A stretch of DNA of 63,669 nucleotides, filler included, from Pelomyxa schiedti (Eukaryota > Protista > Evosea): NCBI GenBank assembly GCA_020536535.1. It is 9 parts of 9 records of this genome, joined end to end, with 100 filler letters (N's around TTAATTAATTAA, not from the genome) between each part and the next. Parts side by side here need not be neighbours in the genome. Positions count along the whole stretch, not along the records: positions 27,618 to 39,460 come from JAHLWZ010000558.1; 8 more parts are not named here. The stretch is one strand, 5' to 3'. Positions 27,618 to 39,560 of this stretch are shown here, piece after piece. A program made the translations under genes and the position numbers. Position 1 is the first letter of the stretch; every line of letters begins with the position of its first letter. Below the pieces are notes generated by a model, which searched no databases, was not told where the DNA came from, and saw nothing but the letters and a program-made list of their open reading frames with translations.

Positions 27618-29957
27618 GCACCAGAGAAAAGGGCGGAGGCCACCAAGGTCCTCCTCATATCGAGCGTGGTGTGGCGCAACATCGTGCCCTACCTCCTGAG
27701 GATGCACCGCAGGGACGCCAAGATGGGCTGGGCCGACTTCTACAGGTACGGCGACGGCTCCTACTACCTCGACGACGACCCTGCAGCCGACAACGCCCCG
27801 ACGGGCTCGGACGCCGCCGTCGCCTCGGCCGACTCGCTCGACGGCTGCGGCGGGCCCAAGGGCCCGGCGTCGGCGTCGGCGCCTTCCCCGCGCGTCACCA
27901 AGGACGCGCCCCGCAACGTCGAGAAGGACATCGACATCGACGACCAGGTGGAGTACGCGGGGCAGCAGCGGCGCGCGCACGACCTCGCCGCGCTCGGCGA
28001 CGCGCTGTTCCCCCTCGCCGTGCTGTGCGCCGACGCCGTGGTGGCGTCGTGCCTCGGCGACCCCGCGCGCGCCCTCGCGGCCTGCGCGCACTCCGGCGCC
28101 CTCGGCGTCGCCGCGAGGGTCGCGGCGCGCTGGCGCCTCGCGCCCGACGACGTGTGGACCGACGGCGAGGGCGACGCCTACGAGGCCATGAGGGTCGCCA
28201 TCGGCGCCGGCGACGCGGCCTTCGTCGAACTCCTCAAGTCCAAGTTTGGCAGCCCGCGGCCCTGCGCCATCAGGGAGCTCGAGCTCCCGTTCGCCAACTC
28301 GTTCCTGAGGGCCGCCGTGACTTCCAAGAAGCGGGAGCTCGTGGACTACGTTTTGTCAGTTTACCCGGTCCTGGGCGAGTTCCGGCGAATCGCGGTCCAG
28401 GCTTTCTTTGGGGCCTGCGGTACTAAGGACTGCGGGATGATGAAGTACCTGTGCTCCAGGTTCAATCTCACGGTGGAGGATGTACAATCCTGCTCCAATT
28501 ACGCGCTAAGGGCGTGTTGTGCTACGGGCTCTCTGGAGGTCGTACAGTGGCTCACCACAAGTTATCCTCTTACTCCGAGTGATGCTCGCACCTTTAACAA
28601 TGAAGCACTGAGGATGTGTTGTAAGGCAGGCCACTTGGAGATTGCCGAGTGGCTTTGTATCACTTACGGTCTCACAAAAGCCGATGTGATGGATGTGAAC
28701 TTCGAAATTCTATGCCACTGCTGCCATAATGCCTCCCTCGGCCTTCTCCAGTGGTTGGTAAACAAATTTTCCATTTCTCATGATGATGTCACAGTACAAG
28801 ATAACCGACCTCTTCATGATGCTTGTTCAAGTGGGGACTTGTCTTTTGTCCAACTATTTGCACGGCAGTTCTCACTTACTTCTTCTGATATCCGCTCTAA
28901 GGCAAACTATGCACTCTGGAGTTGCTGCGTTTCCGGTCACCTGGATATTGCTATATGGTTGACAAAGGAATACTCTTTGACAGCCGATGACTTGCGCGCA
29001 ACGACTTTTCCCCTAACATGTTGCAATGGCCATAAGGATTGTGTGCAATGGCTGACAAAAACCTTTGGGCCTTTCCCGTTGGAAGCAATTCAGAACGCAC
29101 TTAATATGAGTACAGAGCACGGAAACGGGGATGTTGTGGAATTCATTTTAAACGAGTATCCAAGTCAAAACATTCTAACACCAAAAGCACTGCGTAGCAT
29201 GTGCGAATCTGGGTTGCTCGATACTTTTCAGCGGCTTGTATCCCGATATAGCCTTACACCAGATTCTCCTCTTGTTTCTGAATGGATCCACAATGTTTTT
29301 AGTCAGTGCTGTAGCAAGGGGAGAATTGAGACAGTGAGGTGGCTGGTTGACGAATTTGGAGCTAGGGAACCGGAGTCAGATGGAACTCTTCTATATTGCA
29401 TGCGTAACGCAGCCACAGCCGGGAACATTGACCTTGCAAAGTGGTTTGCGGGGCACTTCCCCAAATTTCTGGCACAATGCACTAATCCCCAAGAAATTGT
29501 GGCAACGTGCAGAGAATGCTGCCGGACAGGCCAATCACAGGTTGTTGAGTGGCTACTGAGTGGAACACAAGAACTCCAACCCAATGAAGTGGAGAACCTC
29601 ATATTTACTGCCCTGTACGGCGGCCACATTGGGCTAGCTTCCTGGCTGATTGATAAATACCACATAAAAGTGTTTACAAAATTAACAACCACGGTCCTAC
29701 CCGCATTGTGCCAACAAAGCCGGCTGAGAACAGCAAAATGGTACTGCCAGAAGTTTGGTGTGTATTCATCACGCCCCCACTTTGACTGGGATTCAATGTA
29801 TATGTCTTATGATAAGAACAAGTACATGGTGTTCTGGCTGAAGCAGAAGTTTGGAGCCATCCCAGTATCTGTTCAGAGGTACTTGGCCACCTGTCAAGCC
29901 ACTGAAAAGGCGGAGAGAAAACCTCCACCACCCCCCAATAAGTGCAATGTGATGTAA
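27618..29957 (+). CDS. Ankyrin-like repeat protein with 'S.VVW...A(L/M)FPL' N-motif and C-terminal CaaX (5' truncated)
   Basis: Open from the contig start; repeats NYALRACCATGSLEVVQWL, NEALRMCCKAGHLEIAEWL; ends PPPPNKCNVM*. Confidence 0.85.
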   Translation, partial: APEKRAEATKVLLISSVVWRNIVPYLLRMHRRDAKMGWADFYRYGDGSYYLDDDPAADNAPTGSDAAVASADSLDGCGGPKGPASASAPSPRVTKDAPRNVEKDIDIDDQVEYAGQQRRAHDLAALGDALFPLAVLCADAVVASCLGDPARALAACAHSGALGVAARVAARWRLAPDDVWTDGEGDAYEAMRVAIGAGDAAFVELLKSKFGSPRPCAIRELELPFANSFLRAAVTSKKRELVDYVLSVYPVLGEFRRIAVQAFFGACGTKDCGMMKYLCSRFNLTVEDVQSCSNYALRACCATGSLEVVQWLTTSYPLTPSDARTFNNEALRMCCKAGHLEIAEWLCITYGLTKADVMDVNFEILCHCCHNASLGLLQWLVNKFSISHDDVTVQDNRPLHDACSSGDLSFVQLFARQFSLTSSDIRSKANYALWSCCVSGHLDIAIWLTKEYSLTADDLRATTFPLTCCNGHKDCVQWLTKTFGPFPLEAIQNALNMSTEHGNGDVVEFILNEYPSQNILTPKALRSMCESGLLDTFQRLVSRYSLTPDSPLVSEWIHNVFSQCCSKGRIETVRWLVDEFGAREPESDGTLLYCMRNAATAGNIDLAKWFAGHFPKFLAQCTNPQEIVATCRECCRTGQSQVVEWLLSGTQELQPNEVENLIFTALYGGHIGLASWLIDKYHIKVFTKLTTTVLPALCQQSRLRTAKWYCQKFGVYSSRPHFDWDSMYMSYDKNKYMVFWLKQKFGAIPVSVQRYLATCQATEKAERKPPPPPNKCNVM

Positions 29958-30087
29958 ATAGTAATAACAATAAACTGCCGCGTTATAAAACAAGCACCCA
30001 ACTGGCATGTGTTGTCTCACCACCATTTCGGCACCCTCCGAAAATGAAAACAGGTTTTTCGCTGAAAATCCAAAAACCCAACCAATA

Positions 30088-33000
30088 ATGCACGGCAGTA
30101 CTACGGCCGCCCGACGTTCCAAGACACCAACGCCCGGAATGGCATCATCCCCCGGTCGTGTGGCTGTTTCGGGGCACGACGAGGCAGCCTACTACGACGA
30201 TTCGGGTGCACGCCACGGTCGTCAGGCACACCAACCTCGTATGCAGCAGCAGCAGCAACAACAACCCATAAGTGAGTTCTGTGACACACGAGCCCGGCAA
30301 CAGCCGCCAAGGCAGACACCACCGCATCAACACCAGCAGCGGATGTCGTCGTCAATGGGGACGGCGACGTCGGTGTCGCCTACAGTGGCAACGAAGGACC
30401 CAAGACGATCCGGGCACGGGCGTGCCAGGGACGACTACGAAGACGAGGACGGCGGNNNNNNNNNNNNNNNNNNNNNNNNNNNNNNNNNNNNNNNNNNNNN
30501 NNNNNNNNNNNNNNNNNNNNNNNNNNNNNNNNNNNNNNNNNNNNNNNNNNNNNNNAGCAGCGGATGTCGTCGTCAATGGGGACGGCGACGTCGGTGTCGC
30601 CTACAGTGGCAACGAAGGACCCAAGACGATCCGGGCACGGGCGTGCCAGGGACGACTACGAAGACGAGGACGGCGGCGGAGGGGGCGGCGGCGGAGGCGA
30701 CGAGGACGAGGAGCAGCCGCAGTACGGAAGCGAGAGGTCTGGGGATCCCCGCCAGGTCCCAGGGGCGGCCGCAAGGCAGCAGCAGCAGCAGCACCGCCAC
30801 GCCCTGGCGTCGTCGGCCTCCACGGCGGCCGCGCCGGCGATGTCTACCACGAGCCAAGGGGGAGGAGGCGGGGGAGACATCAGGCGCCAGCACCAGCATG
30901 CGCACTCGCAGTCCCAGGCCCAGTTGGCGCAGCCTCAGCAGGGCGGCGGTGGTGGTGGTGGCGACAGAGAAAGAGACAGGGAGGGGGGGCACAGGCATGC
31001 CCAGCACGACGTGGGGAGCCCGCAGGCCCAGCCGCACAGGCAGGTGCCAGACTCCCAGCACGGCGGGCGGGGGGAGCCGCCGGCCCAAGCCCATGGGGGG
31101 CGGGCGGACCGCCAGGCACACGCCTCGGCGGCCGCGGCCCCCCCGAGCCAGCAGCAGGCCCGGCCACAGGCGGCAGCGCAGGCAGCGGCCGCCGCCAGTG
31201 ATGGGGGGTCAGGGGGGGCCGCAACTGGGGAGGCTCCTGTGAGGGGGTTGTTTGGGGCGCCGCTGGACGTCGTGGTTTCGCGGGAGAAGGGCACCGGGGG
31301 TGTGCCTGCTGTTGTGAGGGCGATCACGGCGTTCCTTATGTCGGAGGATTCTGAGCCGGGCTGGTCACTGGCTGCTGCGATGAGGGATCCAGCAAAGACG
31401 CAAGAGCTGGCAAAGCACATGGATATGTGTAAGCAAAGCAATAATCCCCTTCTGGGTTGATGGAATATTTTCTGGAATCGGTAATTAACCCTTTTGTTTT
31501 TTCAAATAAGGTTGGAAGAAAGGCAAGGCTATAGATAGTTCAGTTTTGCTCAACTATGGAAGTACTGTTGTATATAGTGTTCTCAAGGTGTATCTTCATC
31601 GTATCCCAAGCTGTGTATACTGTACACCTGAAACACACAACCAGTTGCTAAAGTGCTCATGTTTGTTACTGTGGTTGTCTTATTGATTTTTGTATAACTA
31701 TTCCATCAGGTGTTGAATCTGACGATGAGTGTAGAGAACTCGCACTACAATCTTTCTCACAGCTGCCCTATGACAATATTGCCTTGATACACCACCTCGT
31801 TTCTTTCCTGCGATCTCTGGTTACACAAAAAAAGGAGAATGCCACGGTATTTTTCATGCAGTTCTACTGGTTTTTAAAGCTTCTACAGCTGAAATTGGCA
31901 AGTGAGATTATGACCCTGCTTTTATGTACTACAAAAGAGGATGCCATACCCCTGACAAAGATATTTCGAGCTGTAATAAAGAGAGGAATGCCACCGTATG
32001 TAAAATTACTTGCATCCAAATTATTGAACTAGACACATACACAACAAGTCCTCAGCAGCCTGCAAATAAGATAAGGTTTGCCATTGCATCAACTGTTTTT
32101 CTTTCCCCTTTAAAAAAACAAAAAAAAAAAAGCAACTCAGAAACTCCAAGTTCCAACAAATTAGTTTCGAGGTAGGTAAAAGTATCACTATTTTTTTTCC
32201 TTATCAGTAATAGGCCAACTCATGATAACACTGCCATGTCAGCCGAAACATCTCCAGACCAACCTCAGGTAGAACTCTATTGCATGATCAGACTAGAGCT
32301 AAATATGTACACCAGGAAGCGAGTTCTGCAGATGAATTGCAAAAACTGAGATCAGCCTATGCACTTTTGGAGCAGAAGTATCTCAATCAGCAGAAGACTC
32401 TACAAATGTATGAGAGCAGGAGTCCAGATTTAAGTGGGAAGCCATGTGTGTTCTGCTTTTGGTGAGTTGCATTTGAAATAATATCCTGCCCCACTAACAG
32501 AAATTAAAATTACCTAAAAAGAGCAGTGTTTCTGATGTGGACGACCCAGCACTTGAATTTGCAGATGACCAGAGTTTGTATTGCGCAAGGAAAAAATTCT
32601 CGTTTGACCGAGTCTTTTCTGGGAATACATCACAAGAAACCCTCTTTCAGCATACAACTGTAATTAGTTTGAGTAAAACTACACTAATTGCCTTTCCAGA
32701 ACCACTTGGAGGCGGCCGTAGATGGTTATAATACATTCATTTTGGCATATGGGCCCTCAGGGAGTGGCAAGGTAATTAATACTTATAAAGTACTTTAAAC
32801 TTAACTCCTTTATGTTAGACTCAAACATTGATGGGAGATCACGGCAATCCAGGAGTCCTTACCAGAGCTGCCAAACATCTCTTCGAGGTTCTGGCTAAAG
32901 TTTCGGACTCAGATTGTATAGTCACAGTATGTATGTTGGAGCTGTACAGGGAAGTTGTATGTCTCTTCCTTTTTTTTCATAATGGCTTACTAAAATCTTA

Positions 33001-36000
33001 CTAAGTTTGTTGACCTTTTATCAAATGGGCAGTCCAGGCAACCCACAATCAAGAGGACTCCTATTGTATTGCCTTCTCTTCACTCGACTTTTTCTAATAT
33101 TCTGAAAGGGAGTAGACATTCTCAATACCAATCAAGTTCAAGTAAGCTCGTCACGAGAGCTTCTTAGCATTATTGACAAAGGGACACAGAGCCGCAACTC
33201 CCTCGTTTCCAGTGTGTAAGCTACATCGGCAACACAAAAAGATGACACTTTTTAGCCTCCAAGGACCGTTCTCTAAATTCACATTCTATTGTCACAGTGA
33301 AGGTAGAAGTGACGCAAAGGGAAACAAAAAGAGTAACAGCAGGAAAGGTACAAGACACATCCAGTCATTCAGTTTTAATCTGATTAACATAAAAGCTCAA
33401 CTTCATTGCTTTTGCTAATGCTGAGAGTTCTCTGAACCAAGAAACAGTATTTTCCTAGCTCGCATTTTCCTTTGTAACACTCTTTCCTTGGAAAAAGGAC
33501 ACTACAGGGCTAGTGACACTAAATGACGCAATTGTGGCAGTTGGGAGGTATCCTCATGCTCCCTATAAAATGTCTCAGATTACCGAGTTTTTGTCTGATA
33601 TATTGGGTTTTTTTTTACTTATACTTTAACTTTTCTTATGGGACTTCAGGGGGTAATAGCAAAGCACTACTGATAACTTTTCTGAGCAGTAATACAACCC
33701 ACAATCAAGCATCACTCAAGTAATTCTTTTTAATTGCTTTTTTTTTTTTTTCATCAACCCAAGATTCTCAACGAACTTCCGGAATTTGACCAGCAAACCA
33801 ACTCCTAACGTGTTCATTTATGTATCAGATGACAATGCTCTGCTTCAGCAGAAGCTAGCCAAACTCCAGAAGGAAAATTCTGAATTAAAAGCACAAGTCA
33901 CACAATTAACTGCTCCTCGTAAAGTAACTGAACCCAATGGTGGAAAGGTAAGACATGCCAAAATGCCTTCCAATTTCTAACCTACAGTGCAAAGGCACCT
34001 TCAGTTGAACCAATAACTTCTCACAACGACCAAAACTCAACAGTGGTTATAATTTTCGTTCCCTCCCTTTCCATTAACTGTAGACAGATTCCTAACATCG
34101 ACAATAAAACGCACCTTCTTCATAATGTGAGGACTTATTACAGATATCCACTTTCTAACTACCCTGACTATTAAGGTGAAAAGAGCTAAACCAGCTAATC
34201 GACATTTACCAACCAAGAATTCCCGTGAGGTTCCCAGAATTTTCACCCTCGAGTTTTCTTATTCCTCGAAGATCATGCAATCCCTGGTTCAGAAGGCAGT
34301 TCTTGAGAACGAAAAACCAGAAAATAAAGCCAAGGCGTCAGGCACACCCAAAGACATGCTTGCCTCAATCGCCAAAGTAAATAATTATGTACCTATTACT
34401 CTTAACATCGATGTAGGCTGCTTCTGAAACACACTTGCGAAAACGCAGTCTTACAGGCCCTGTGCTTCCCCACCTCCCAAGTCCAGATGCTGTACCCACT
34501 CCAAAGCCTTCTAGTGACAAAAATACTTCCAGCAATAGCACCCCAAATGACCCTAACGTGGGAAAAAGTAAAGGACTCACGCGTTCTGCAGCAATGTCAT
34601 CTAGTGGTGGCACTTCATCAGCACCGAGTTCAGGAAATGGTGATTTACGGCAACATTTTACTCGGTCACTAAGCTCTGGATCACTTACAAATCCAGTAAG
34701 TCTTAGTGAGTATTCCACATTACTTATTGTGTCTAGTTGATTGAACCTGATCCATCACCAACTAAACTCATTGAAGTCAAAGGACGCCTACACTGTAAAG
34801 CAAGACAAGTTTTAATGTCTTATCGATCTTTAAATCAGAACAGTTGCTTTGTGCTAGATTGCATCAGCAGAATATTTGTGATTTCCTTGTTAGGTGCCTT
34901 TTACTCCCTTATACATACACAGGTGTGGAAAGGCTCTAAGGCCAATCGAATGGAAATAAGTTGGGCCATTGGCCTGGCCAACCGAATAAAAGACAAAGAC
35001 AGAATTTCGCGATCCAAAGTAGATGAGCTAGGTAGGAGACTATCCCCTTCTGTGAGGGTACACTAAATATTAAAGAGGAAAATACTTTTGAGAGAGAGTT
35101 TTGGAACCCACTTGGGGGAAAGCACCCAATTGACGAATCTGAACCCACAGGCCAGGAAGAAGACACCGGCGTTGACATATTATATAGGTTTACATTACTC
35201 CCTAGCTTTATGCCTGGGAACCAAAATACAGGGTGCAAGAAAGAGATACGGGAGAATACTGTGCCTTAGAAATTGCACGCAATAACTTACATTTCTCTGC
35301 ACTTGAGAGGTTTATTCTTTACATAGAAGGTTATGCTAATGGCATGCAGTCAGGGCTGTTTTATTGTTGATGGGATCACAGAATTATATCTATGGATTGG
35401 AAAACAGTCTCCTATTCCAATTCGCAGAGGTGCTACTGGTGTTGCTCTGGTACTTGTACACATCGTTTTTTTTGATTACTATCTAAATCATTGGTGTGGG
35501 GAAATAGCAACTTCTTGCTAAGCCCAACCACCCTGGATGGTTGAAATTGATCAAAATAAGTGATGGGAGTGAAGTTGTAATGTTCCGAGAGCGCTTTGTC
35601 GACACTGCCGGACAACTCCCAATCAAAGCAACTGAAGTGCAGTCAGCATGTACTCCAGGTAACAAGACCCAAAGGTTCCCAACTGTTCTCAATATTTCAA
35701 GTTGACATGACCACGTTCGATGTTTCCCTGATGTGGGAACCCGGCAAGCCACCAGTAGAACAACAGCCAGATGATGGCACAGGGCAGTGTGATGTATATT
35801 AGTAAATTCATATCTCATGGTAATTGTTTGTACTAGATCTGGAAGGTTGTAAAATCGGAAAAGGAGCCTCTTGATGTGAGCACTTATGGACATTTCTACT
35901 CCTCAGAGAGCTATTTGTTACTTTATAAATATAAAATTCGATACAGAGACTGCTTTTTGATGTTTTTCTGGTGAACTCCTATCCATAAAATTGTTGTTTA

Positions 36001-37435
36001 TACTCACTTACAATAAAGGCAAGGACGAAATAGTACAACGGTTCCATTATTCCCCAAATTTCATATCTAACAATCAAAAAGCTTGATAAGGGAACCTCAG
36101 CCGCCCTCACAAAAGATTTGGTTGAAAAATACCAAATTGATGCCAAACATGTATTCCTTTTTTACATGTAAGCGCACTAATGTGCTCTCAAAGATTCGTA
36201 TTGTACAAAATCAAGAAACACAGCACTTCCTTAAAATTTTCCAAAACAAATATATTGTTCACCGGGTATGACTGTGTGCACTATTTACCATGACTTACGA
36301 GCTCCAAAGGGTTCTTCCTCGGGGCACGTTCACCTTTACCACGTTTCTGGTTTCTGTTCATATGGAATTCCCTACGCTATTGAGATTGAAGTGGCAAGTT
36401 CATATGGGCAACAAATTCCTTGTTTAATCTCCAACAGGCCGCCTCAGCTTTGAGCACTAACGATTGTTTCCTGCTCGTCACACCTAGAACGGTGTTTATT
36501 TGGATAGGAAATAATTCCGATGAAACGTGCCGCGATTCTTGTGTAAAACTATGTGCACTAATAACGGTATGGTTGGCAATCATGGAACTTTTCCTCACCA
36601 AACAATAAAGGAGTCACGAAAAACTTTTACTGTCCAAGAAAAATCAGAACCCAAAGAGTTTTGGAGTGCCATTGGAGAGACTGCACCTTATGATATCTGC
36701 CGGCGCGCGTCTGTGAGGTTATTTCAGTGCGGGAAAGCCTCGGGGAAATATCTGGTATCAATTAAAAAAAGAAAAAGAGATCTAACCAGTAACACAAGGC
36801 CAAAGAGCTATTTAATTGGTGCCAAGATACTTTACTCGAGAGTCATCTTGTCATTGTGGATGGGTATTATGTAATTTATGTATGGATAGGAAAAGATTCG
36901 TCAGAAGATGAAAAGAAGAGAACTTTCGAAATTGCAATGGTATGAGGTCAGGTAGCACCAAGATGTCTAACGAACCGTAGGAATATAGTGCAGAAATGGT
37001 TACCCGTAGAGAAGACTTAAAGGGCCACCTTGATGCACTAGTTGTTACAAATTTACTGGAACCCCCTGCTTTCCGATACTTCTTCCATGGGTGGGACCCG
37101 GCTGCAAGTAAGGTACACAATTTCAACCATCCTTTTCTGTGCCACTGACACCTTCTTCAGTGGGAACCAACATTTACTCCCATGAGCGTTGATGAAGTTC
37201 TAAAGAGCTATATGCGGACCTATTCCCTGGAAGAACTTCAGGAGCACCCACCTCATCTGGACCAGTCATGTCTGGAGGCAAGCAGTCTCCCTCGCTAAAC
37301 CGTCTTAATTTCGTTCGATAGAACTATTTATCTGATGAAGACTTCCAATTACACTTTGGAAAGACCAAAGCGGAATTTGCCGCCTCCACAAAATGGCAAC
37401 AAGAGCAAAAAAAGAGGGACCTCCAACTGTTTTAG
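30088..37435 (+). CDS. Large multi-exon protein: low-complexity N-terminus, RhoGAP-like, kinesin motor-like, coiled coil, CPI-like, WH2-like, gelsolin repeats, villin headpiece
   Basis: GLFGAPL..VPAVVRAI, VLKVYLHRIP, LPYDNIALIHHLVSFL; FSFDRVF, DGYNTFILAYGPSGSGKT; KLIEVKGR..SLNQNSCFVLD, YGHFYSSESYL, EPPAFRYFFHGW; LENYLSDEDFQLHFG..KWQQEQKKRDLQLF*. Single-gene continuity inferred. Confidence 0.7.
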
Positions 37436-37603
37436 GGAAACGAAACAAATAAAAAGTGTTATGTTACCCACCGGCACATTTGCTTGTGTTATTCCGAAAT
37501 AAAAAAAACCCAAATTTTACAAGAAAAGCCAGAAAGAACACAACTGGTGTAGGAGGAGAAATAACTTACTATTATTAAAAATACATTTGTGAGTGAATCC
37601 CCA

Positions 37604-39315
37604 CTATGAGTGGCATATAAAGAGCTCAATAGTGTCACCCTGTATAAGTCCCATATCAGAAACCAAGCAGTTTCCCCTGAGCTGCTGCCCAGACTGCACA
37701 AAGTGCTTAGTGCAAGGAGTAGAAAACACCGGGCAGCTGGCGAACGGCTGGTCCCTAATCAAGCAAGGCGAGGGCGTAGCAGGCCTGGTCAGCTCAGCCA
37801 GCAACATAAGGCCCCCCTGCGTGCTCCCATTGATATTACTGTGAGAGTGCAAGTGCGAGTATGACGAGGGCCCGCTGGGTGACGGCGCATGAGGGGGAAC
37901 GAACGAGGGAGAGGGCGAGGGGCAGGAACAGCAGGGGGAAGGGGAGGGGCAGGGGCAGGGAGAGGGAGTGGCCGGCTGGACGAGGAGGTCGTAGGGGGGG
38001 CAGCGGCTGATGTGCATGTGGAGGTTGCCGTCGGTGAGGGCGCATTCTTGCAGCAGGGCGTCGTCTATGAACGCGGTCTTGAACAGGTGGAAGACGTGGT
38101 GGAGGGTGTCTGTTGGGTGGAGTAGGACTTCTCTGGGCTGTGACAGTGCTGCTAGGCCGAAGCAGGCATGGCATACATTCAGGGATACCTGGGGTGAGGG
38201 AATGTGTTAGAAAGAACTTTTCTTCAAACTACATTTGTAGAAATATCAGGTGAGTGATTTGTGTTTCGTACCTCCACAACGGACTTGTAGAAGGATATCC
38301 AGTCACAATAGGTTCCTTCTATGTTGGATACCATACCCCAGTTGGCACAATAAGAATACTGTAATAAGACAATCTGCTGCCACACAGGATCCTGCCTGGC
38401 AATTTGATTCCATCTATGTGAGACCTACATCACCGAATGAATAACCAAAAAGGCATGTTACTTTGCTTTATATTAGTTTAGTAAGGCATAACGGCTTGGG
38501 TGCATTTTATTCCAACATGAATTTGAATTCTAAACAAGTCACTCATCCACTTACCAGTCTAGCTACAGAACAATCCCTCGCTGTCAAGAATCCAAATACA
38601 TGAACAAGTACGAAATCCGGTAATTCCGCGATTCCANNNNNNNNNNNNNNNNNNNNNNNNNNNNNNNNNNNNNNNNNNNNNNNNNNNNNNNNNNNNNNNN
38701 NNNNNNNNNNNNNNNNNNNNNNNNNNNNNNNNNNNNCATGAATTTGAATTCTAAACAAGTCACTCATCCACTTACCAGTCTAGCTACAGAACAATCCCTC
38801 GCTGTCAAGAATCCAAATACATGAACAAGTACGAAATCCGGTAATTCCGCGATTCCAACTCCTTCAATTCTGTGTCCGCGTCGACCGCTAGATGACGTCC
38901 CACAATTCCCCTGGTGCCGCCGGTAGTGAGAGTGGTGCCCGTGCTTGCGCCCACTGTCATCGCGGCGATCATCCTGCCGCCGCTTTTTGTCATTATGGGA
39001 TCGCTTGTGGTGCCGCCGGCTCTCGTCCACGGCGACGGCGCCGATCTCGTTGGTCGAGTTGAAATTAGGATTTACGACGACGATGGGAACCACCGACGCG
39101 TTGTCGGGCTGCGGCTGTTGTTTAGGTGGGTTTGTCTTCGTGTCTGGGTTGGGCTTGGTCGCGGGACTTATGGGTTTGTTGTGGAGGTTTTTCTTGTGCT
39201 TGTTGTCGAAGTACTCCATGATTAATTTAAGTGGCGACGGGGGATGTTGACGCCGAATAACTGCACCACCATTCGCGGCGATTGCACTACCAATACTACT
39301 GGGGGTGTGTATCAT
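37604..39315 (-). CDS. F-box protein with C-terminal ubiquitin-like region (multi-exon; F-box exon duplicated across the gap)
   Basis: IAELPDFVLVHVFGFLTARDCSVARLVS; EVLLHPTDTLHHV...FVQSGQQLRGNCLVSDMGLIQGDTIELF. Confidence 0.65.
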
Positions 39316-39560
39316 TGAATGGGGGAAATCGTGGGAGCTGAAGGGATGGGGGGTATTGGTATGTTGGTAGTGTACCAGTACACTAGGGGCGAAAAAAGGA
39401 ATGAAAATGGAAAGAGCGGAAAAACGAAAGCAATGTTTTGGGAAATCGCTACAACAATGGNNNNNNNNNNNNNNNNNNNNNNNNNNNNNNNNNNNNNNNN
39501 NNNNTTAATTAATTAANNNNNNNNNNNNNNNNNNNNNNNNNNNNNNNNNNNNNNNNNNNN

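What the first reader, a model, noticed from the sequence alone, without database searches (positions are those of the whole stretch)
30088..37435. RhoGAP-kinesin-CPI-WH2-villin fusion: candidate actin-microtubule integrator
Seen: on one strand, with only intron-sized gaps, a RhoGAP-like fold (about 31240-31990), a kinesin motor (about 32440-33800) with neck coil, LLHN/VKRAKPANRHLPT (capping-protein-interaction-like), DMLASIAK/AASETHLRK (WH2-like), several gelsolin repeats and a headpiece. Known: these modules bind Rho GTPases, microtubules, capping protein, G-actin and F-actin respectively. I know no described protein that combines them.
Basis: partly seen in the sequence, partly recalled or inferred. 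Interest (0 to 1): 0.8.

Follow-up and report, generated by a model that had tools for sequence, protein, structure and literature searches.

The report
Probable kinesin-villin fusion gene
In a compact, intron-rich protist genome, a degenerate kinesin motor domain appears to be spliced in frame to a villin-type actin-binding core, which would tie microtubules to actin filaments in one protein; a Rho-GAP-like domain just upstream may belong to the same gene, but no RNA yet spans the joins.

Summary
The gap at 30456-30555 is an un-merged 121-nt contig overlap; collapsing it keeps the frame.

An open 40-exon, 1,793-aa model runs from ATG 30088 to stop 37435. Eight of its introns are RNA-verified.

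- **Kinesin-to-villin join:** well supported by sequence. The two bridging introns score 20.4 and 16.0, and only 1 of 2,000 shuffles gives as good an in-frame path. There is no AATAAA after the read-through stop, and the linker SNP at 34206 is synonymous.
- **No RNA crosses the join:** the one cDNA 5' end lies exactly on the in-frame ATG at 34356, so a villin-only transcript remains possible.
- **RhoGAP-to-kinesin join:** undecided (p 0.03, against 0.06 for a true intergenic control).
- **Kinesin chemistry:** the P-loop is kept but switch I, switch II and RxRP are lost. It is still under purifying selection (5 of 5 SNPs synonymous), so it is probably a static microtubule binder.
- **Short motifs:** the CPI-like motif is not supported and the WH2-like motif is only a resemblance.
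- **Relatives:** none of 108 villin-core relatives carries a kinesin.

The parts
30088..31428 (+). Exon 1 of the maximal model. It starts at ATG 30088, codes a GC-rich (0.63-0.73) Q/G/A-rich disordered N-terminus, and ends with the start of the RhoGAP-like domain from about 31245 (GLFGAPLDVVV...).
   Evidence: One open frame once the false gap is collapsed. The tail 31230-31428 goes to RhoGAP clusters, 30 of 30 best hits, top score 0.96.
30335..30676 (.). False assembly gap: 100 N (30456-30555) flanked by an identical 121-nt duplication (30335-30455 = 30556-30676).
   Evidence: Alignment identical over 121 nt. The same peptide is read on both sides. Gap 2 shows the same 121-nt pattern. X3's 13,302-nt Logan contig reaches upstream across this position.
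31511..31995 (+). RhoGAP-like domain, exons 2-4: 31511-31660, 31710-31846 and 31889-31995. If the donor at 31996 is not used, the frame runs on to stop TAG 32030-32032.
   Evidence: Pfam RhoGAP 13.8 bits, profile 86-128. Language-model search: 28 of 30 best hits are RhoGAP, score 0.92. An indel at 31875 falls in predicted intron 31847-31888.
31996..32315 (+). Undecided RhoGAP-to-kinesin bridge. Candidate introns are 31996-32048 (score 9.5), 32172-32213 (17.8) and 32269-32315 (12.5). Candidate exons are 32049-32171 (contains an A12 run) and 32214-32268. ATG 32236 is the alternative start of a separate kinesin-villin gene.
   Evidence: Intron scores. Path test p = 0.03, against 0.064 for the control. 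No path exists under the strict criteria. AATAAG lies 35 nt after stop 32030.
32316..33947 (+). Short N-terminal coil, divergent kinesin motor domain (about 32443-33790) and C-terminal heptad coil (about 33828-33911). Eleven exons: 32316-32461, 32524-32659, 32700-32771, 32819-32956, 33006-33065, 33109-33211, 33256-33347, 33396-33446, 33498-33606, 33650-33719, 33764-33947.
   Evidence: Colinear Pfam Kinesin pieces. PDB kinesin hits. Coil hits. All 5 SNPs here are synonymous, and the indel at 33354 lies in an intron.
32751..32821 (+). P-loop GPSGSGK|T, split by intron 32772-32818. The GxxxxGK(S/T) pattern is kept.
   Evidence: Read from the sequence. Pfam profile 66-88 and 89-139 abut here. Consensus GQTXXGK(S/T) from PMC5076506.
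33270..33284 (+). Switch I position reads SLNSH where SSRSH is expected. The arginine is replaced by asparagine.
   Evidence: Manual splicing and colinearity. No canonical switch I is found in any frame of the piece. The exon has no Pfam hit even at E 1.
33408..33425 (+). Switch II position reads AFANAE where DLAGSE (DxxGxE) is expected. Both the aspartate and the glycine are lost.
   Evidence: No canonical switch II is found in any frame. Consensus DXXGXE from PMC5076506.
33948..34376 (+). Kinesin-to-villin bridge. Intron 33948-33994, exon 33995-34126 (possible in-frame intron 34046-34087), intron 34127-34175, exon 34176-34376 (possible in-frame intron 34230-34271). If the first intron is unspliced, the frame stops at 33978.
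   Evidence: Intron scores 20.4 and 16.0, against a decoy 99th percentile of 17.1 and 95th of 14.1. Only 1 of 2,000 shuffles gives an equally good path. The SNP at 34206 is synonymous, and the SNP at 33989 is intronic. The proposed frame has the best codon score of the three.
34356..34356 (+). 5' end of the only cDNA-end contig. The template-switch-oligo tail GTACATGGG directly abuts the A of an in-frame ATG (the M of DMLASIAK).
   Evidence: read-laying table 7 and record 1. Sequence context.
34353..34446 (+). WH2/beta-thymosin-like stretch DMLASIAK|AASETHLRKR, spanning RNA-verified intron 34377-34416.
   Evidence: Splice seen in RNA contig X1 record 1. The motif likeness rests on reading only; neither exon alone has a Pfam WH2 hit.
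34417..34695 (+). Serine/proline-rich disordered linker exon (93 aa). Both flanking introns are RNA-verified.
   Evidence: No Pfam family.
34737..37277 (+). G1-less villin core. G2-type 34737-35187, G3-type 35232-35658, G4-type 35702-36265, G5-type 36310-36754, G6-type 36799-37112, then the spacer exon 37161-37277.
   Evidence: Pfam Gelsolin on five pieces. Colinear with P0001 residues 988-1674. Aligns with villin-5 residues 132-682, with nothing matching residues 1-130. RNA-verified introns: 34696-34736, 35971-36018, 36041-36081, 36151-36193, 36940-36980, 37113-37160.
37322..37435 (+). Villin headpiece and stop codon. It is preceded by the RNA-verified GC-AG intron 37278-37321. AATAAA lies at 37448-37453.
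   Evidence: VHP E 3.2e-13, 49.8 bits, above the 27-bit cut-off. Intron. Poly(A) signal.

Best explanation
**What it is.** The stretch belongs to a compact protist genome with many 38-56-nt introns. Judging by its nearest villin relatives, the organism is probably an amoebozoan. Positions 32236-37435 most likely form one gene of about 1,240 aa. Its parts, in order:
- a short coil;
- a divergent kinesin motor domain;
- a heptad coiled coil;
- a disordered linker of about 230 aa;
- a villin core without G1 (G2 to G6);
- a headpiece.

The upstream disordered and RhoGAP-like part (30088-31995) may be spliced on as well, giving 1,793 aa. I put that at about even odds.

**How it probably works (inferred).** The kinesin domain keeps its fold, its P-loop and part of the alpha4/L12/alpha5 microtubule face. 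It has lost switch I (SLNSH), switch II (AFANAE) and RxRP. It therefore cannot run the normal ATPase cycle and would act as a static, possibly nucleotide-insensitive, microtubule-binding head. The coil would pair two chains. The G2-G6 core and headpiece would bind and bundle F-actin. Lacking G1, it is not expected to sever or cap filaments. Together this makes a dimeric microtubule-to-actin crosslinker. If the RhoGAP-like domain is attached, it would place Rho-family regulation at the same sites.

**Shown versus inferred.** Shown: domain identities, the frame, eight introns, and purifying selection. Inferred: both joins as transcripts, the loss of ATPase activity, and all binding activities.
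For: **Domains.** Colinear kinesin hits. VHP at 49.8 bits and five gelsolin repeats colinear with G2-G6. RhoGAP from two independent pieces, plus a sub-threshold Pfam hit.

**One frame.** The 40-exon model is open for 1,793 aa. Eight of its introns are seen in single-cell RNA contigs.

**Kinesin-to-villin join.**
- Intron 33948-33994 scores 20.4, higher than all 32 trusted introns and above the 99th percentile of decoys. Intron 34127-34175 scores 16.0.
- Only 1 of 2,000 dinucleotide shuffles gives an ORF-preserving path of that quality; 31 of 3,000 pass the simpler criteria.
- Frame 2 is open for 75 codons upstream of the RNA-covered start.
- AATAAA lies 14-15 nt after both genuine stops but is absent for 120 nt after the kinesin read-through stop.
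- There is no GC-rich 5' region at 32236 or 34275 (0.40-0.43), against 0.53-0.75 at the three other gene starts.

**The model as a whole, from the second haplotype (X4).** All 6 indels fall in predicted introns (p 6e-4). Of 16 exonic SNPs, 11 are synonymous against 4.75 expected (p 0.0014). Kinesin SNPs are 5 of 5 synonymous (p 0.005).

**Not a chimera.** An independent X4 contig spans 32141-37399.

**Degenerate motifs are real.** No canonical switch I, switch II or RxRP exists in any frame.
Against: - No RNA covers the kinesin, the RhoGAP part or either join. RNA coverage starts at 34356.
- That start is a template-switch cDNA end lying exactly on an in-frame ATG with a CA initiator-like context. 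It could be a real start for a villin-only transcript.
- The genome is very compact: 130 nt separate the stop of gene 1 from the ATG of gene 2. Spacers of 200-380 nt could therefore be intergenic.
- A proximal acceptor at 33987 would end the kinesin after six more codons.
- No protein with kinesin plus gelsolin/VHP was found among the 23 nearest G2 relatives or 85 long villin-core proteins.
- RhoGAP-to-kinesin: no path under strict criteria. Its bottleneck score is 9.5 (p 0.03), against 8.0 (p 0.064) for a true intergenic control. A12 and T8 runs and an available ATG at 32236 fit a separate gene.
- The activity claims rest on motif reading alone.
Confidence: 0.68

Rival explanations
1. Separate genes. 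A kinesin-like gene ends just after the coil, either at stop 33978 if unspliced or at CKGTFS* through the proximal acceptor at 33987. An independent G1-less villin gene then starts at ATG 34356 or 34275. The RhoGAP-like gene ends at TAG 32030. The domains would be neighbours, not a fusion.
For: The cDNA 5' end with the template-switch tail sits exactly on in-frame ATG 34356. No RNA lies upstream of it. Intergenic spacers in this piece can be as short as 130 nt. No homologue with the fused architecture was found. The proximal-AG intron scores 18.6.
Against: Frame 2 stays open for 75 codons upstream of 34356. Two top-scoring introns join the frames, with p about 0.0005. No AATAAA follows within 120 nt of the kinesin stop, while both genuine 3' ends have one at +14 or +15. 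The SNP at 34206 is synonymous in the fused frame. Neither putative start has the GC-rich 5' signature. A leaderless mRNA starting on the A of the ATG would be unusual. Single-cell cDNA of a long mRNA is often truncated.
Confidence: 0.25
2. The full triple fusion. RhoGAP-like domain, kinesin and villin are one 1,793-aa protein translated from ATG 30088.
For: An open path exists. Intron 32172-32213, inside the putative spacer, scores 17.8, above the 99th percentile of decoys. The path test gives p 0.03. Only AATAAG at +35 follows stop 32030. The only GC-rich 5' region of the whole stretch is at 30088-31428.
Against: The first bridging intron (31996-32048) is weak at 9.5, has no branch consensus and is 53 nt long. 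The strict path test fails. The true intergenic control reaches a similar p of 0.064. The candidate exon 32049-32171 has a neutral codon score and holds an A12 run. ATG 32236 is available. Both SNPs in the RhoGAP part are non-synonymous.
Confidence: 0.38
3. The kinesin domain is still an active motor that uses non-canonical chemistry. The protein would then carry or slide actin filaments along microtubules, as plant KCH kinesins do, rather than tethering them statically.
For: The P-loop GxxxxGKT is kept. A neck-linker-like KPTPNV and a coil follow the motor. Purifying selection is strong.
Against: The switch I arginine and the switch II aspartate and glycine are all replaced, and RxRP is lost. 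These residues are the strictly conserved catalytic positions of the family (PMC5076506). The L11/alpha4 region is about 10 residues shorter than in kinesin-1, by my reading from memory.
Confidence: 0.15
4. Artefact: a chimeric single-cell assembly, or a decaying pseudogene array.
For: The source is a single-cell assembly with un-merged overlaps. The catalytic motifs are degenerate.
Against: Two assemblies (X3 and X4) are colinear over 32141-37399. The frame is open for 1,793 aa. Synonymous SNPs are in excess and every indel lies in an intron. The 3' half is transcribed and spliced.
Confidence: 0.03

Closest known systems
Plant KCH kinesins (kinesin-14 with a calponin-homology domain), e.g. 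OsKCH2, KCH3 and KCH7 (PMC5852081, PMC12772168)
   Same: One polypeptide combines a kinesin motor domain flanked by coils with an actin-binding module, linking actin filaments to microtubules.
   Different: KCH uses an N-terminal CH domain and an active minus-end motor. Here the actin module is a C-terminal G2-G6 villin core with a headpiece, no CH domain was detected, and the motor's switch motifs are lost.
Amoebozoan villin-core fusion proteins: LRR-villin of dictyostelids and Physarum (P0001, P0027, P0033), PH-villin (P0002), RING-LRR-villin of Pelomyxa (P0004)
   Same: They share the same G1-less core (G2-G6 plus headpiece), preceded by a long low-complexity linker and a swapped-in N-terminal module. 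They are the best sequence matches to the core, at 40-50% identity in G2.
   Different: Their N-terminal modules are LRR, PH, RING or WD40. None of the 108 proteins examined has a kinesin or RhoGAP domain.
Catalytically inactive kinesin-like proteins (KIF26A/B, Costal2, VAB-8; fungal 'pseudoKinesin-21' named in PMC5076506)
   Same: Kinesin fold with degenerate nucleotide-switch motifs, retained under selection and used for binding or scaffolding rather than stepping.
   Different: I recall these from memory, apart from the PMC5076506 mention, and did not compare them here. None is known to me to carry gelsolin repeats.
Motor-plus-RhoGAP systems: myosin IX (motor and RhoGAP in one chain) and centralspindlin (kinesin-6 MKLP1 bound to the RhoGAP CYK-4/MgcRacGAP)
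   Same: If the upstream part is joined, a cytoskeletal motor fold and a RhoGAP fold would act together.
   Different: The join is unproven here. The kinesin shows no kinesin-6 affinity; its exon-wise best PDB hits scatter over kinesin-1, -5, -7 and -14. The state of the GAP's catalytic arginine could not be settled.
Spectraplakins and GAS2-like crosslinkers (MACF1/ACF7, Shot)
   Same: Same proposed job: static linkage of actin to microtubules.
   Different: The domains are unrelated (CH plus GAR/EB-binding motifs). This is an analogy only.

Membership tests
Kinesin superfamily (PF00225) | Motor-domain sequence homology, colinear over the domain | tested here: met
   Exon pieces hit profile positions 30-63, 66-88, 89-139 and 257-293 in genomic order (15.1, 22.2, 26.3 and 13.6 bits). 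Each is below the 29.3-bit whole-protein cut-off because exons were searched singly. PDB kinesins are the best hits for three exons.
Kinesin superfamily (PF00225) | P-loop GQTxxGK(S/T) | tested here: met
   GPSGSGK|T across intron 32772-32818. The GxxxxGKT pattern is kept, with Q changed to P and T to S (consensus from PMC5076506).
Kinesin superfamily (PF00225) | Switch I SSRSH | tested here: not met
   SLNSH at 33270-33284. No S[ST][RK]SH in any frame of the piece.
Kinesin superfamily (PF00225) | Switch II DxxGxE (DLAGSE) | tested here: not met
   AFANAE at 33408-33425. No canonical motif in any frame (consensus from PMC5076506).
Kinesin superfamily (PF00225) | Microtubule binding and microtubule-stimulated ATPase | not testable with these tools
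   L12/alpha5 reads APYKMSQITEFLSDILGG, partly conserved, by reading only.
Villin (gelsolin repeats plus headpiece) | C-terminal villin headpiece | tested here: met
   PF02209, E 3.2e-13, 49.8 bits against a 27-bit cut-off, full length 1-36.
Villin (gelsolin repeats plus headpiece) | Six gelsolin repeats G1-G6 | tested here: not met
   Five repeats. They align with villin-5 residues 132-682 (G2-G6), and nothing aligns with residues 1-130 (G1). The nearest amoebozoan relatives have the same G1-less core.
RhoGAP (PF00620) | Domain homology at the family threshold | tested here: inconclusive
   Pfam gives 13.8 bits against a 24.5-bit cut-off on one exon piece. No PDB hit by sequence. Two non-overlapping pieces both go to RhoGAP clusters by language-model features, at 0.92 and 0.96. 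The joined domain was not searched or folded, by rule.
RhoGAP (PF00620) | Catalytic arginine finger | tested here: inconclusive
   At canonical spacing from the VPAVV helix, the position reads GWSLAAA. Four residues later, AAMRDPAKTQEL resembles the GIFRxSxxTQxV finger as I recall it. No tool alignment was available.
WH2 / beta-thymosin motif | Amphipathic helix followed by LKKV-type motif | not testable with these tools
   DMLASIAK|AASETHLRKR spans a splice, so it has no single reference. Neither half has a Pfam WH2 hit. The I-to-L spacing is 9 and the last residue is R instead of V or T.
Capping-protein-interaction (CPI) motif | LxHxTxxRPK(6x)P consensus (recalled from the literature) | tested here: not met
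   LLHNVKRAKPANRHLPT matches only L and H of the seven fixed positions (T becomes V, R becomes A, P becomes K, K becomes P, and the final P is one residue early). The motif also depends on an unverified splice at 34126|34176.
KCH-type actin-binding kinesins | Calponin-homology domain | tested here: not met
   No CH domain hit in any exon piece scanned. This is a functional analogue only.

The most novel reading that the evidence does not exclude
One locus makes a 1,793-aa protein that unites a RhoGAP-like domain, a catalytically silent kinesin head and a G1-less villin core with a WH2-like element standing where G1 would be. Alternative use of the proximal acceptor at 33987 and of an internal start at 34356 would also release kinesin-only and villin-only products. 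The result would be a switchable tether between microtubules, actin and Rho signalling, with no described counterpart.
Probability: 0.3. Interest if true: 0.72.

Novelty: new variant of a known kind. Interest (0 to 1): 0.55.

Why it matters
Known crosstalk between microtubules and actin runs through a few protein designs: spectraplakins, GAS2-like proteins and plant KCH kinesins. A kinesin-fold head fused to a villin core would be an independently evolved solution in a poorly sampled protist lineage. It would also be a natural example of a kinesin domain kept under selection after losing its switch chemistry. It extends the pattern in Amoebozoa where the G2-G6 and headpiece core is a portable actin-binding cassette behind changing N-terminal modules. 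If the RhoGAP part is attached, the gene would be a fusion-type hint of functional coupling between a kinesin fold and a RhoGAP, as in centralspindlin. The claim can be tested directly with one RT-PCR and two co-sedimentation assays.

Tried and rejected
- **Automatic gene models.** A dynamic-programming model that maximised exon length kept in-frame introns. A retrained log-odds version over-spliced. I replaced both with a hybrid model built by hand, using homology and the RNA joints.
- **Codon-usage scoring.** It separates exons from introns only weakly, so I used it only as a frame check.
- **Path tests.** A loose ORF-path test (36-80-nt introns, no branch requirement) is uninformative: 51-61% of shuffles pass. 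I replaced it with a scored bottleneck test and a control.
- **RhoGAP pieces against PDB sequences.** No relevant hit.
- **Switch I exon against the PDB.** No hit.
- **Word search with the linker piece 34131-34424**, to catch RNA-derived fragments from other runs. No candidate at all.
- **Literature.** No paper holds kinesin motor domain, villin headpiece and gelsolin as an architecture.
- **Kinesin family assignment from single exons.** The best PDB hits scatter over kinesin-1, -5, -7 and -14, so I assign none.
- **My first reading that the RhoGAP arginine finger is missing.** Withdrawn as undecidable.
- **Strand invasion as the cause of the 34356 cDNA end.** Rejected: the 9 nt upstream match the template-switch oligo at only 2 of 9 positions.
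- The joined, spliced protein was never sent to any search, family scan or folding tool. It was used only inside scripts for translation, SNP classification and shuffle tests. Every search was exon by exon, by reference.

Full report
**Scope and rules.** I worked only on positions 27618-39460. The joined protein was used only inside scripts, for translation, SNP classification and shuffle tests. It was never sent to a search, family scan or folding tool. Those joined steps are therefore missing and are listed under next steps.

**The gap.** The 121 nt before the N run (30335-30455) are identical to the 121 nt after it (30556-30676). Both copies encode the same peptide, in different nominal frames. 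If the duplicate is collapsed, the ORF from ATG 30088 runs on without interruption to the donor at 31429. The piece's second gap (38637-38736) has the same 121-nt duplication. Both are therefore un-merged contig overlaps, not missing sequence. The Logan contig of run X3 (13,302 nt, no N) extends from the laid stretch upstream across the gap position.

**What the sequence encodes.** I translated stop-to-stop pieces of the + strand and scanned them against Pfam.
- **Kinesin.** Pieces match PF00225 in genomic order, at profile positions 30-63, 66-88, 89-139 and 257-293.
- **Gelsolin and headpiece.** There are five Gelsolin hits. The last exon is a full villin headpiece (E 3.2e-13, 49.8 bits).
- **PDB.** Single kinesin exons find kinesin chains: KIFC3 and CENP-E, kinesin-1, and KIF11. 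The scatter means I cannot assign a kinesin family.
- **RhoGAP-like part.** This is weaker. One piece gives 13.8 bits against profile 86-128, where the cut-off is 24.5. PDB sequence searches find nothing. Two non-overlapping pieces both go to RhoGAP clusters in the language-model search: 28 of 30 best hits at 0.92, and 30 of 30 with a top score of 0.96, a level that shuffled sequences reach about once in 100. I accept a RhoGAP-like domain. I cannot settle its catalytic arginine: GWSLAAA stands at the canonical spacing, and an MRDPAKTQEL four residues later resembles the finger as I recall it.

**RNA and a second haplotype.** Four runs of one study hold the stretch. X3 is near-identical and probably the source. 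X4 is a second DNA assembly that differs by 22 SNPs and 5 indels. X1 and X2 are low-depth single-cell RNA-seq runs. The RNA contigs cover only parts of 34356-37399.

They show seven GT-AG or GC-AG joints: 34377-34416, 34696-34736, 35971-36018, 36041-36081, 36940-36980, 37113-37160 and 37278-37321. An eighth (36151-36193) is supported by 8 nt read across the junction before the adaptor. Introns are tiny, 40-48 nt, with a CTAAC-like branch 8-22 nt before the AG.

X4 spans 32141-37399 in one contig, so the kinesin and villin parts are adjacent in two assemblies. That rules out an amplification chimera.

**Gene model.** I combined the RNA joints, tblastn of the retrieved villin relatives against the window and manual splicing of the kinesin. 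The result is a 40-exon model, open for 1,793 aa.

The X4 differences test it independently.
- All 6 indels fall in predicted introns, which make up 29% of the stretch (p = 6e-4).
- Of 16 exonic SNPs, 11 are synonymous against 4.75 expected (p = 0.0014).
- In the kinesin part, 5 of 5 are synonymous (p = 0.005).

The kinesin-like domain is therefore a selected coding sequence, not a relic.

**State of the kinesin.** The P-loop is kept (GPSGSGK|T). At the colinear positions, switch I reads SLNSH, switch II reads AFANAE, and the N-terminal RxRP position reads FCSV. No canonical switch I, switch II or RxRP motif occurs in any frame of the kinesin region, so mis-splicing is not the cause. The exons holding the switch regions are also the ones Pfam fails to recognise. 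The consensus P-loop GQTXXGK(S/T) and switch II DXXGXE are the strictly conserved active-site motifs (PMC5076506). The L12/alpha5 stretch (APYKMSQITEFLSDILGG) is still recognisable. I infer a head that binds microtubules but does not cycle. This is inference, not a test.

**State of the villin core.** The first gelsolin repeat is of the G2 type. It aligns with residues 132-201 of Arabidopsis lyrata villin-5 and with the second repeat of other villins. The next four repeats align with G3 to G6. Nothing aligns with G1. The core is colinear with residues 988-1674 of the dictyostelid LRR-villin P0001, which has the same G1-less layout.

**Is it one gene? Kinesin to villin.** Right after the coil, intron 33948-33994 has a GTAAGA donor and a TTCTAAC branch 14 nt before the AG. 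It scores 20.4 on a donor, branch and acceptor model trained on 32 other introns (mean 12.6, minimum 5.7). That is the best score in the locus and is above the 99th percentile (17.1) of 355 decoys. Intron 34127-34175 scores 16.0. Together they carry the kinesin frame into frame 2, which then runs open into the RNA-verified exon.

In a dinucleotide-shuffle test of 33948-34355, only 1 of 2,000 shuffles allowed an ORF-preserving path whose weakest intron scored as well. With simple yes-or-no criteria, 31 of 3,000 passed.

Further support:
- There are 75 stop-free codons upstream of the RNA start.
- The proposed frame has the best codon score of the three.
- A first-position SNP at 34206 is synonymous only in this frame.
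- AATAAA lies 14-15 nt after the stops of the two genes with clear 3' ends, but is absent for 120 nt after the kinesin read-through stop.
- There is no GC-rich 5' segment (0.40-0.43, against 0.53-0.75 at three other gene starts).

Against the fusion:
- No RNA crosses the join.
- The only cDNA-end contig begins, after the template-switch tail GTACATGGG, exactly on the in-frame ATG at 34356. Strand invasion does not explain this, because the upstream 9 nt match the oligo at only 2 of 9 positions. It may be a truncated cDNA of a long mRNA, or a true internal start giving a 752-aa villin-only product.
- A proximal AG at 33987, 7 nt after the branch A, would instead terminate a kinesin-only product.

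I put the fused transcript at about 0.7-0.75.

**Is it one gene? RhoGAP to kinesin.** A path exists through introns 31996-32048, 32172-32213 and 32269-32315. The middle intron is excellent (17.8). The first is weak (9.5, no branch consensus, 53 nt). Under the strict criteria there is no path at all. The scored test gives p = 0.03, but the same test across the genuine spacer between the ankyrin gene and ATG 30088 gives p = 0.064. The evidence is therefore thin.
- **For a separate gene:** the spacer holds A12 and T8 runs, and ATG 32236 is available in frame.
- **For a join:** only an AATAAG at +35 follows stop 32030, and the only GC-rich 5' region lies upstream, at 30088-31428.

I leave this near even odds.

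**Short motifs.** The CPI-like string LLHN|VKRAKPANRHLPT matches the recalled LxHxTxxRPK(6x)P consensus only at L and H. It also depends on an unverified splice. I do not support it. The WH2-like string has the helix-then-LRK layout of WH2 and beta-thymosin motifs, but with longer spacing and an atypical last residue. Because it spans a splice, it could not be scanned. It remains a resemblance. It is notable only because it sits where G1, which binds the same actin cleft, is missing.

**Comparison with what is known.** An exhaustive HMMER search of 1.84 billion representatives with the G2 piece gave 23 hits, the best at 40-50% identity. Hits with long N-terminal extensions carry LRR, PH or RING-LRR modules. 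A word search with the P0001 core found 85 long villin-core proteins, mostly Amoebozoa (Dictyostelia, Physarum, Pelomyxa). Their partners are LRR, PH, RING, WD40 or RRM. None has PF00225 or PF00620.

The core is thus a portable cassette in this group, and kinesin would be a new partner. Two literature searches found no paper describing the combination. The nearest functional analogues are the plant KCH kinesins, which join an actin-binding CH domain to a kinesin-14 motor (PMC5852081, PMC12772168). The survey covered only the villin side.

**Verdict.** It is a new variant of a known kind (a domain-fusion cytoskeletal crosslinker). It is of moderate to good interest and needs one RT-PCR to become solid.

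Noticed in passing
38516-38857: The second assembly gap (38637-38736) is flanked by an identical 121-nt duplication (38516-38636 = 38737-38857), the same size as at the first gap. It is probably an un-merged contig overlap. It interrupts a minus-strand ORF.
   Followed up: yes
38764-39315 (- strand): An ORF of 183 aa from ATG 39315, with an F-box-like motif at its end (Pfam F-box-like E 0.003, below the cut-off). Its 5' part is GC-richer (0.53) than what follows.
   Followed up: partly
27666-29957 (+ strand): A single-exon ankyrin-repeat protein (Ank_2 E 1e-26) whose start is cut by the piece's edge. Its stop lies only 130 nt before ATG 30088, showing how compact the genome is.
   Followed up: partly
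27618-28400, 30600-31400, 37618-38300, 38868-39367: GC falls steeply within genes: 0.73-0.75 in the first 600-800 nt and 0.40-0.46 further on. The GC-rich patch at 37618-38300 has no assigned gene. It could be the 5' end of a small + strand gene starting near 37889.
   Followed up: no
29969-29974 and 37448-37453: AATAAA lies 14-15 nt after the first base of the stop codon in both genes with a clear 3' end. This is a possible fixed-distance poly(A) signal.
   Followed up: partly
37278-37321: An RNA-verified GC-AG intron (GCAAGC...GATAG, 44 nt) among otherwise GT-AG introns of 38-56 nt.
   Followed up: yes
33948-33994: Two acceptor AGs lie 7 nt apart (33987 and 33994). The distal one keeps the frame into the villin part. 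The proximal one would end the protein after six more codons. This could act as an alternative-splicing switch.
   Followed up: partly
31653 and 31772: Both X4 SNPs in the RhoGAP-like exons are non-synonymous (K to N, D to Y), while all five in the kinesin are synonymous. The numbers are too small to claim relaxed constraint.
   Followed up: partly
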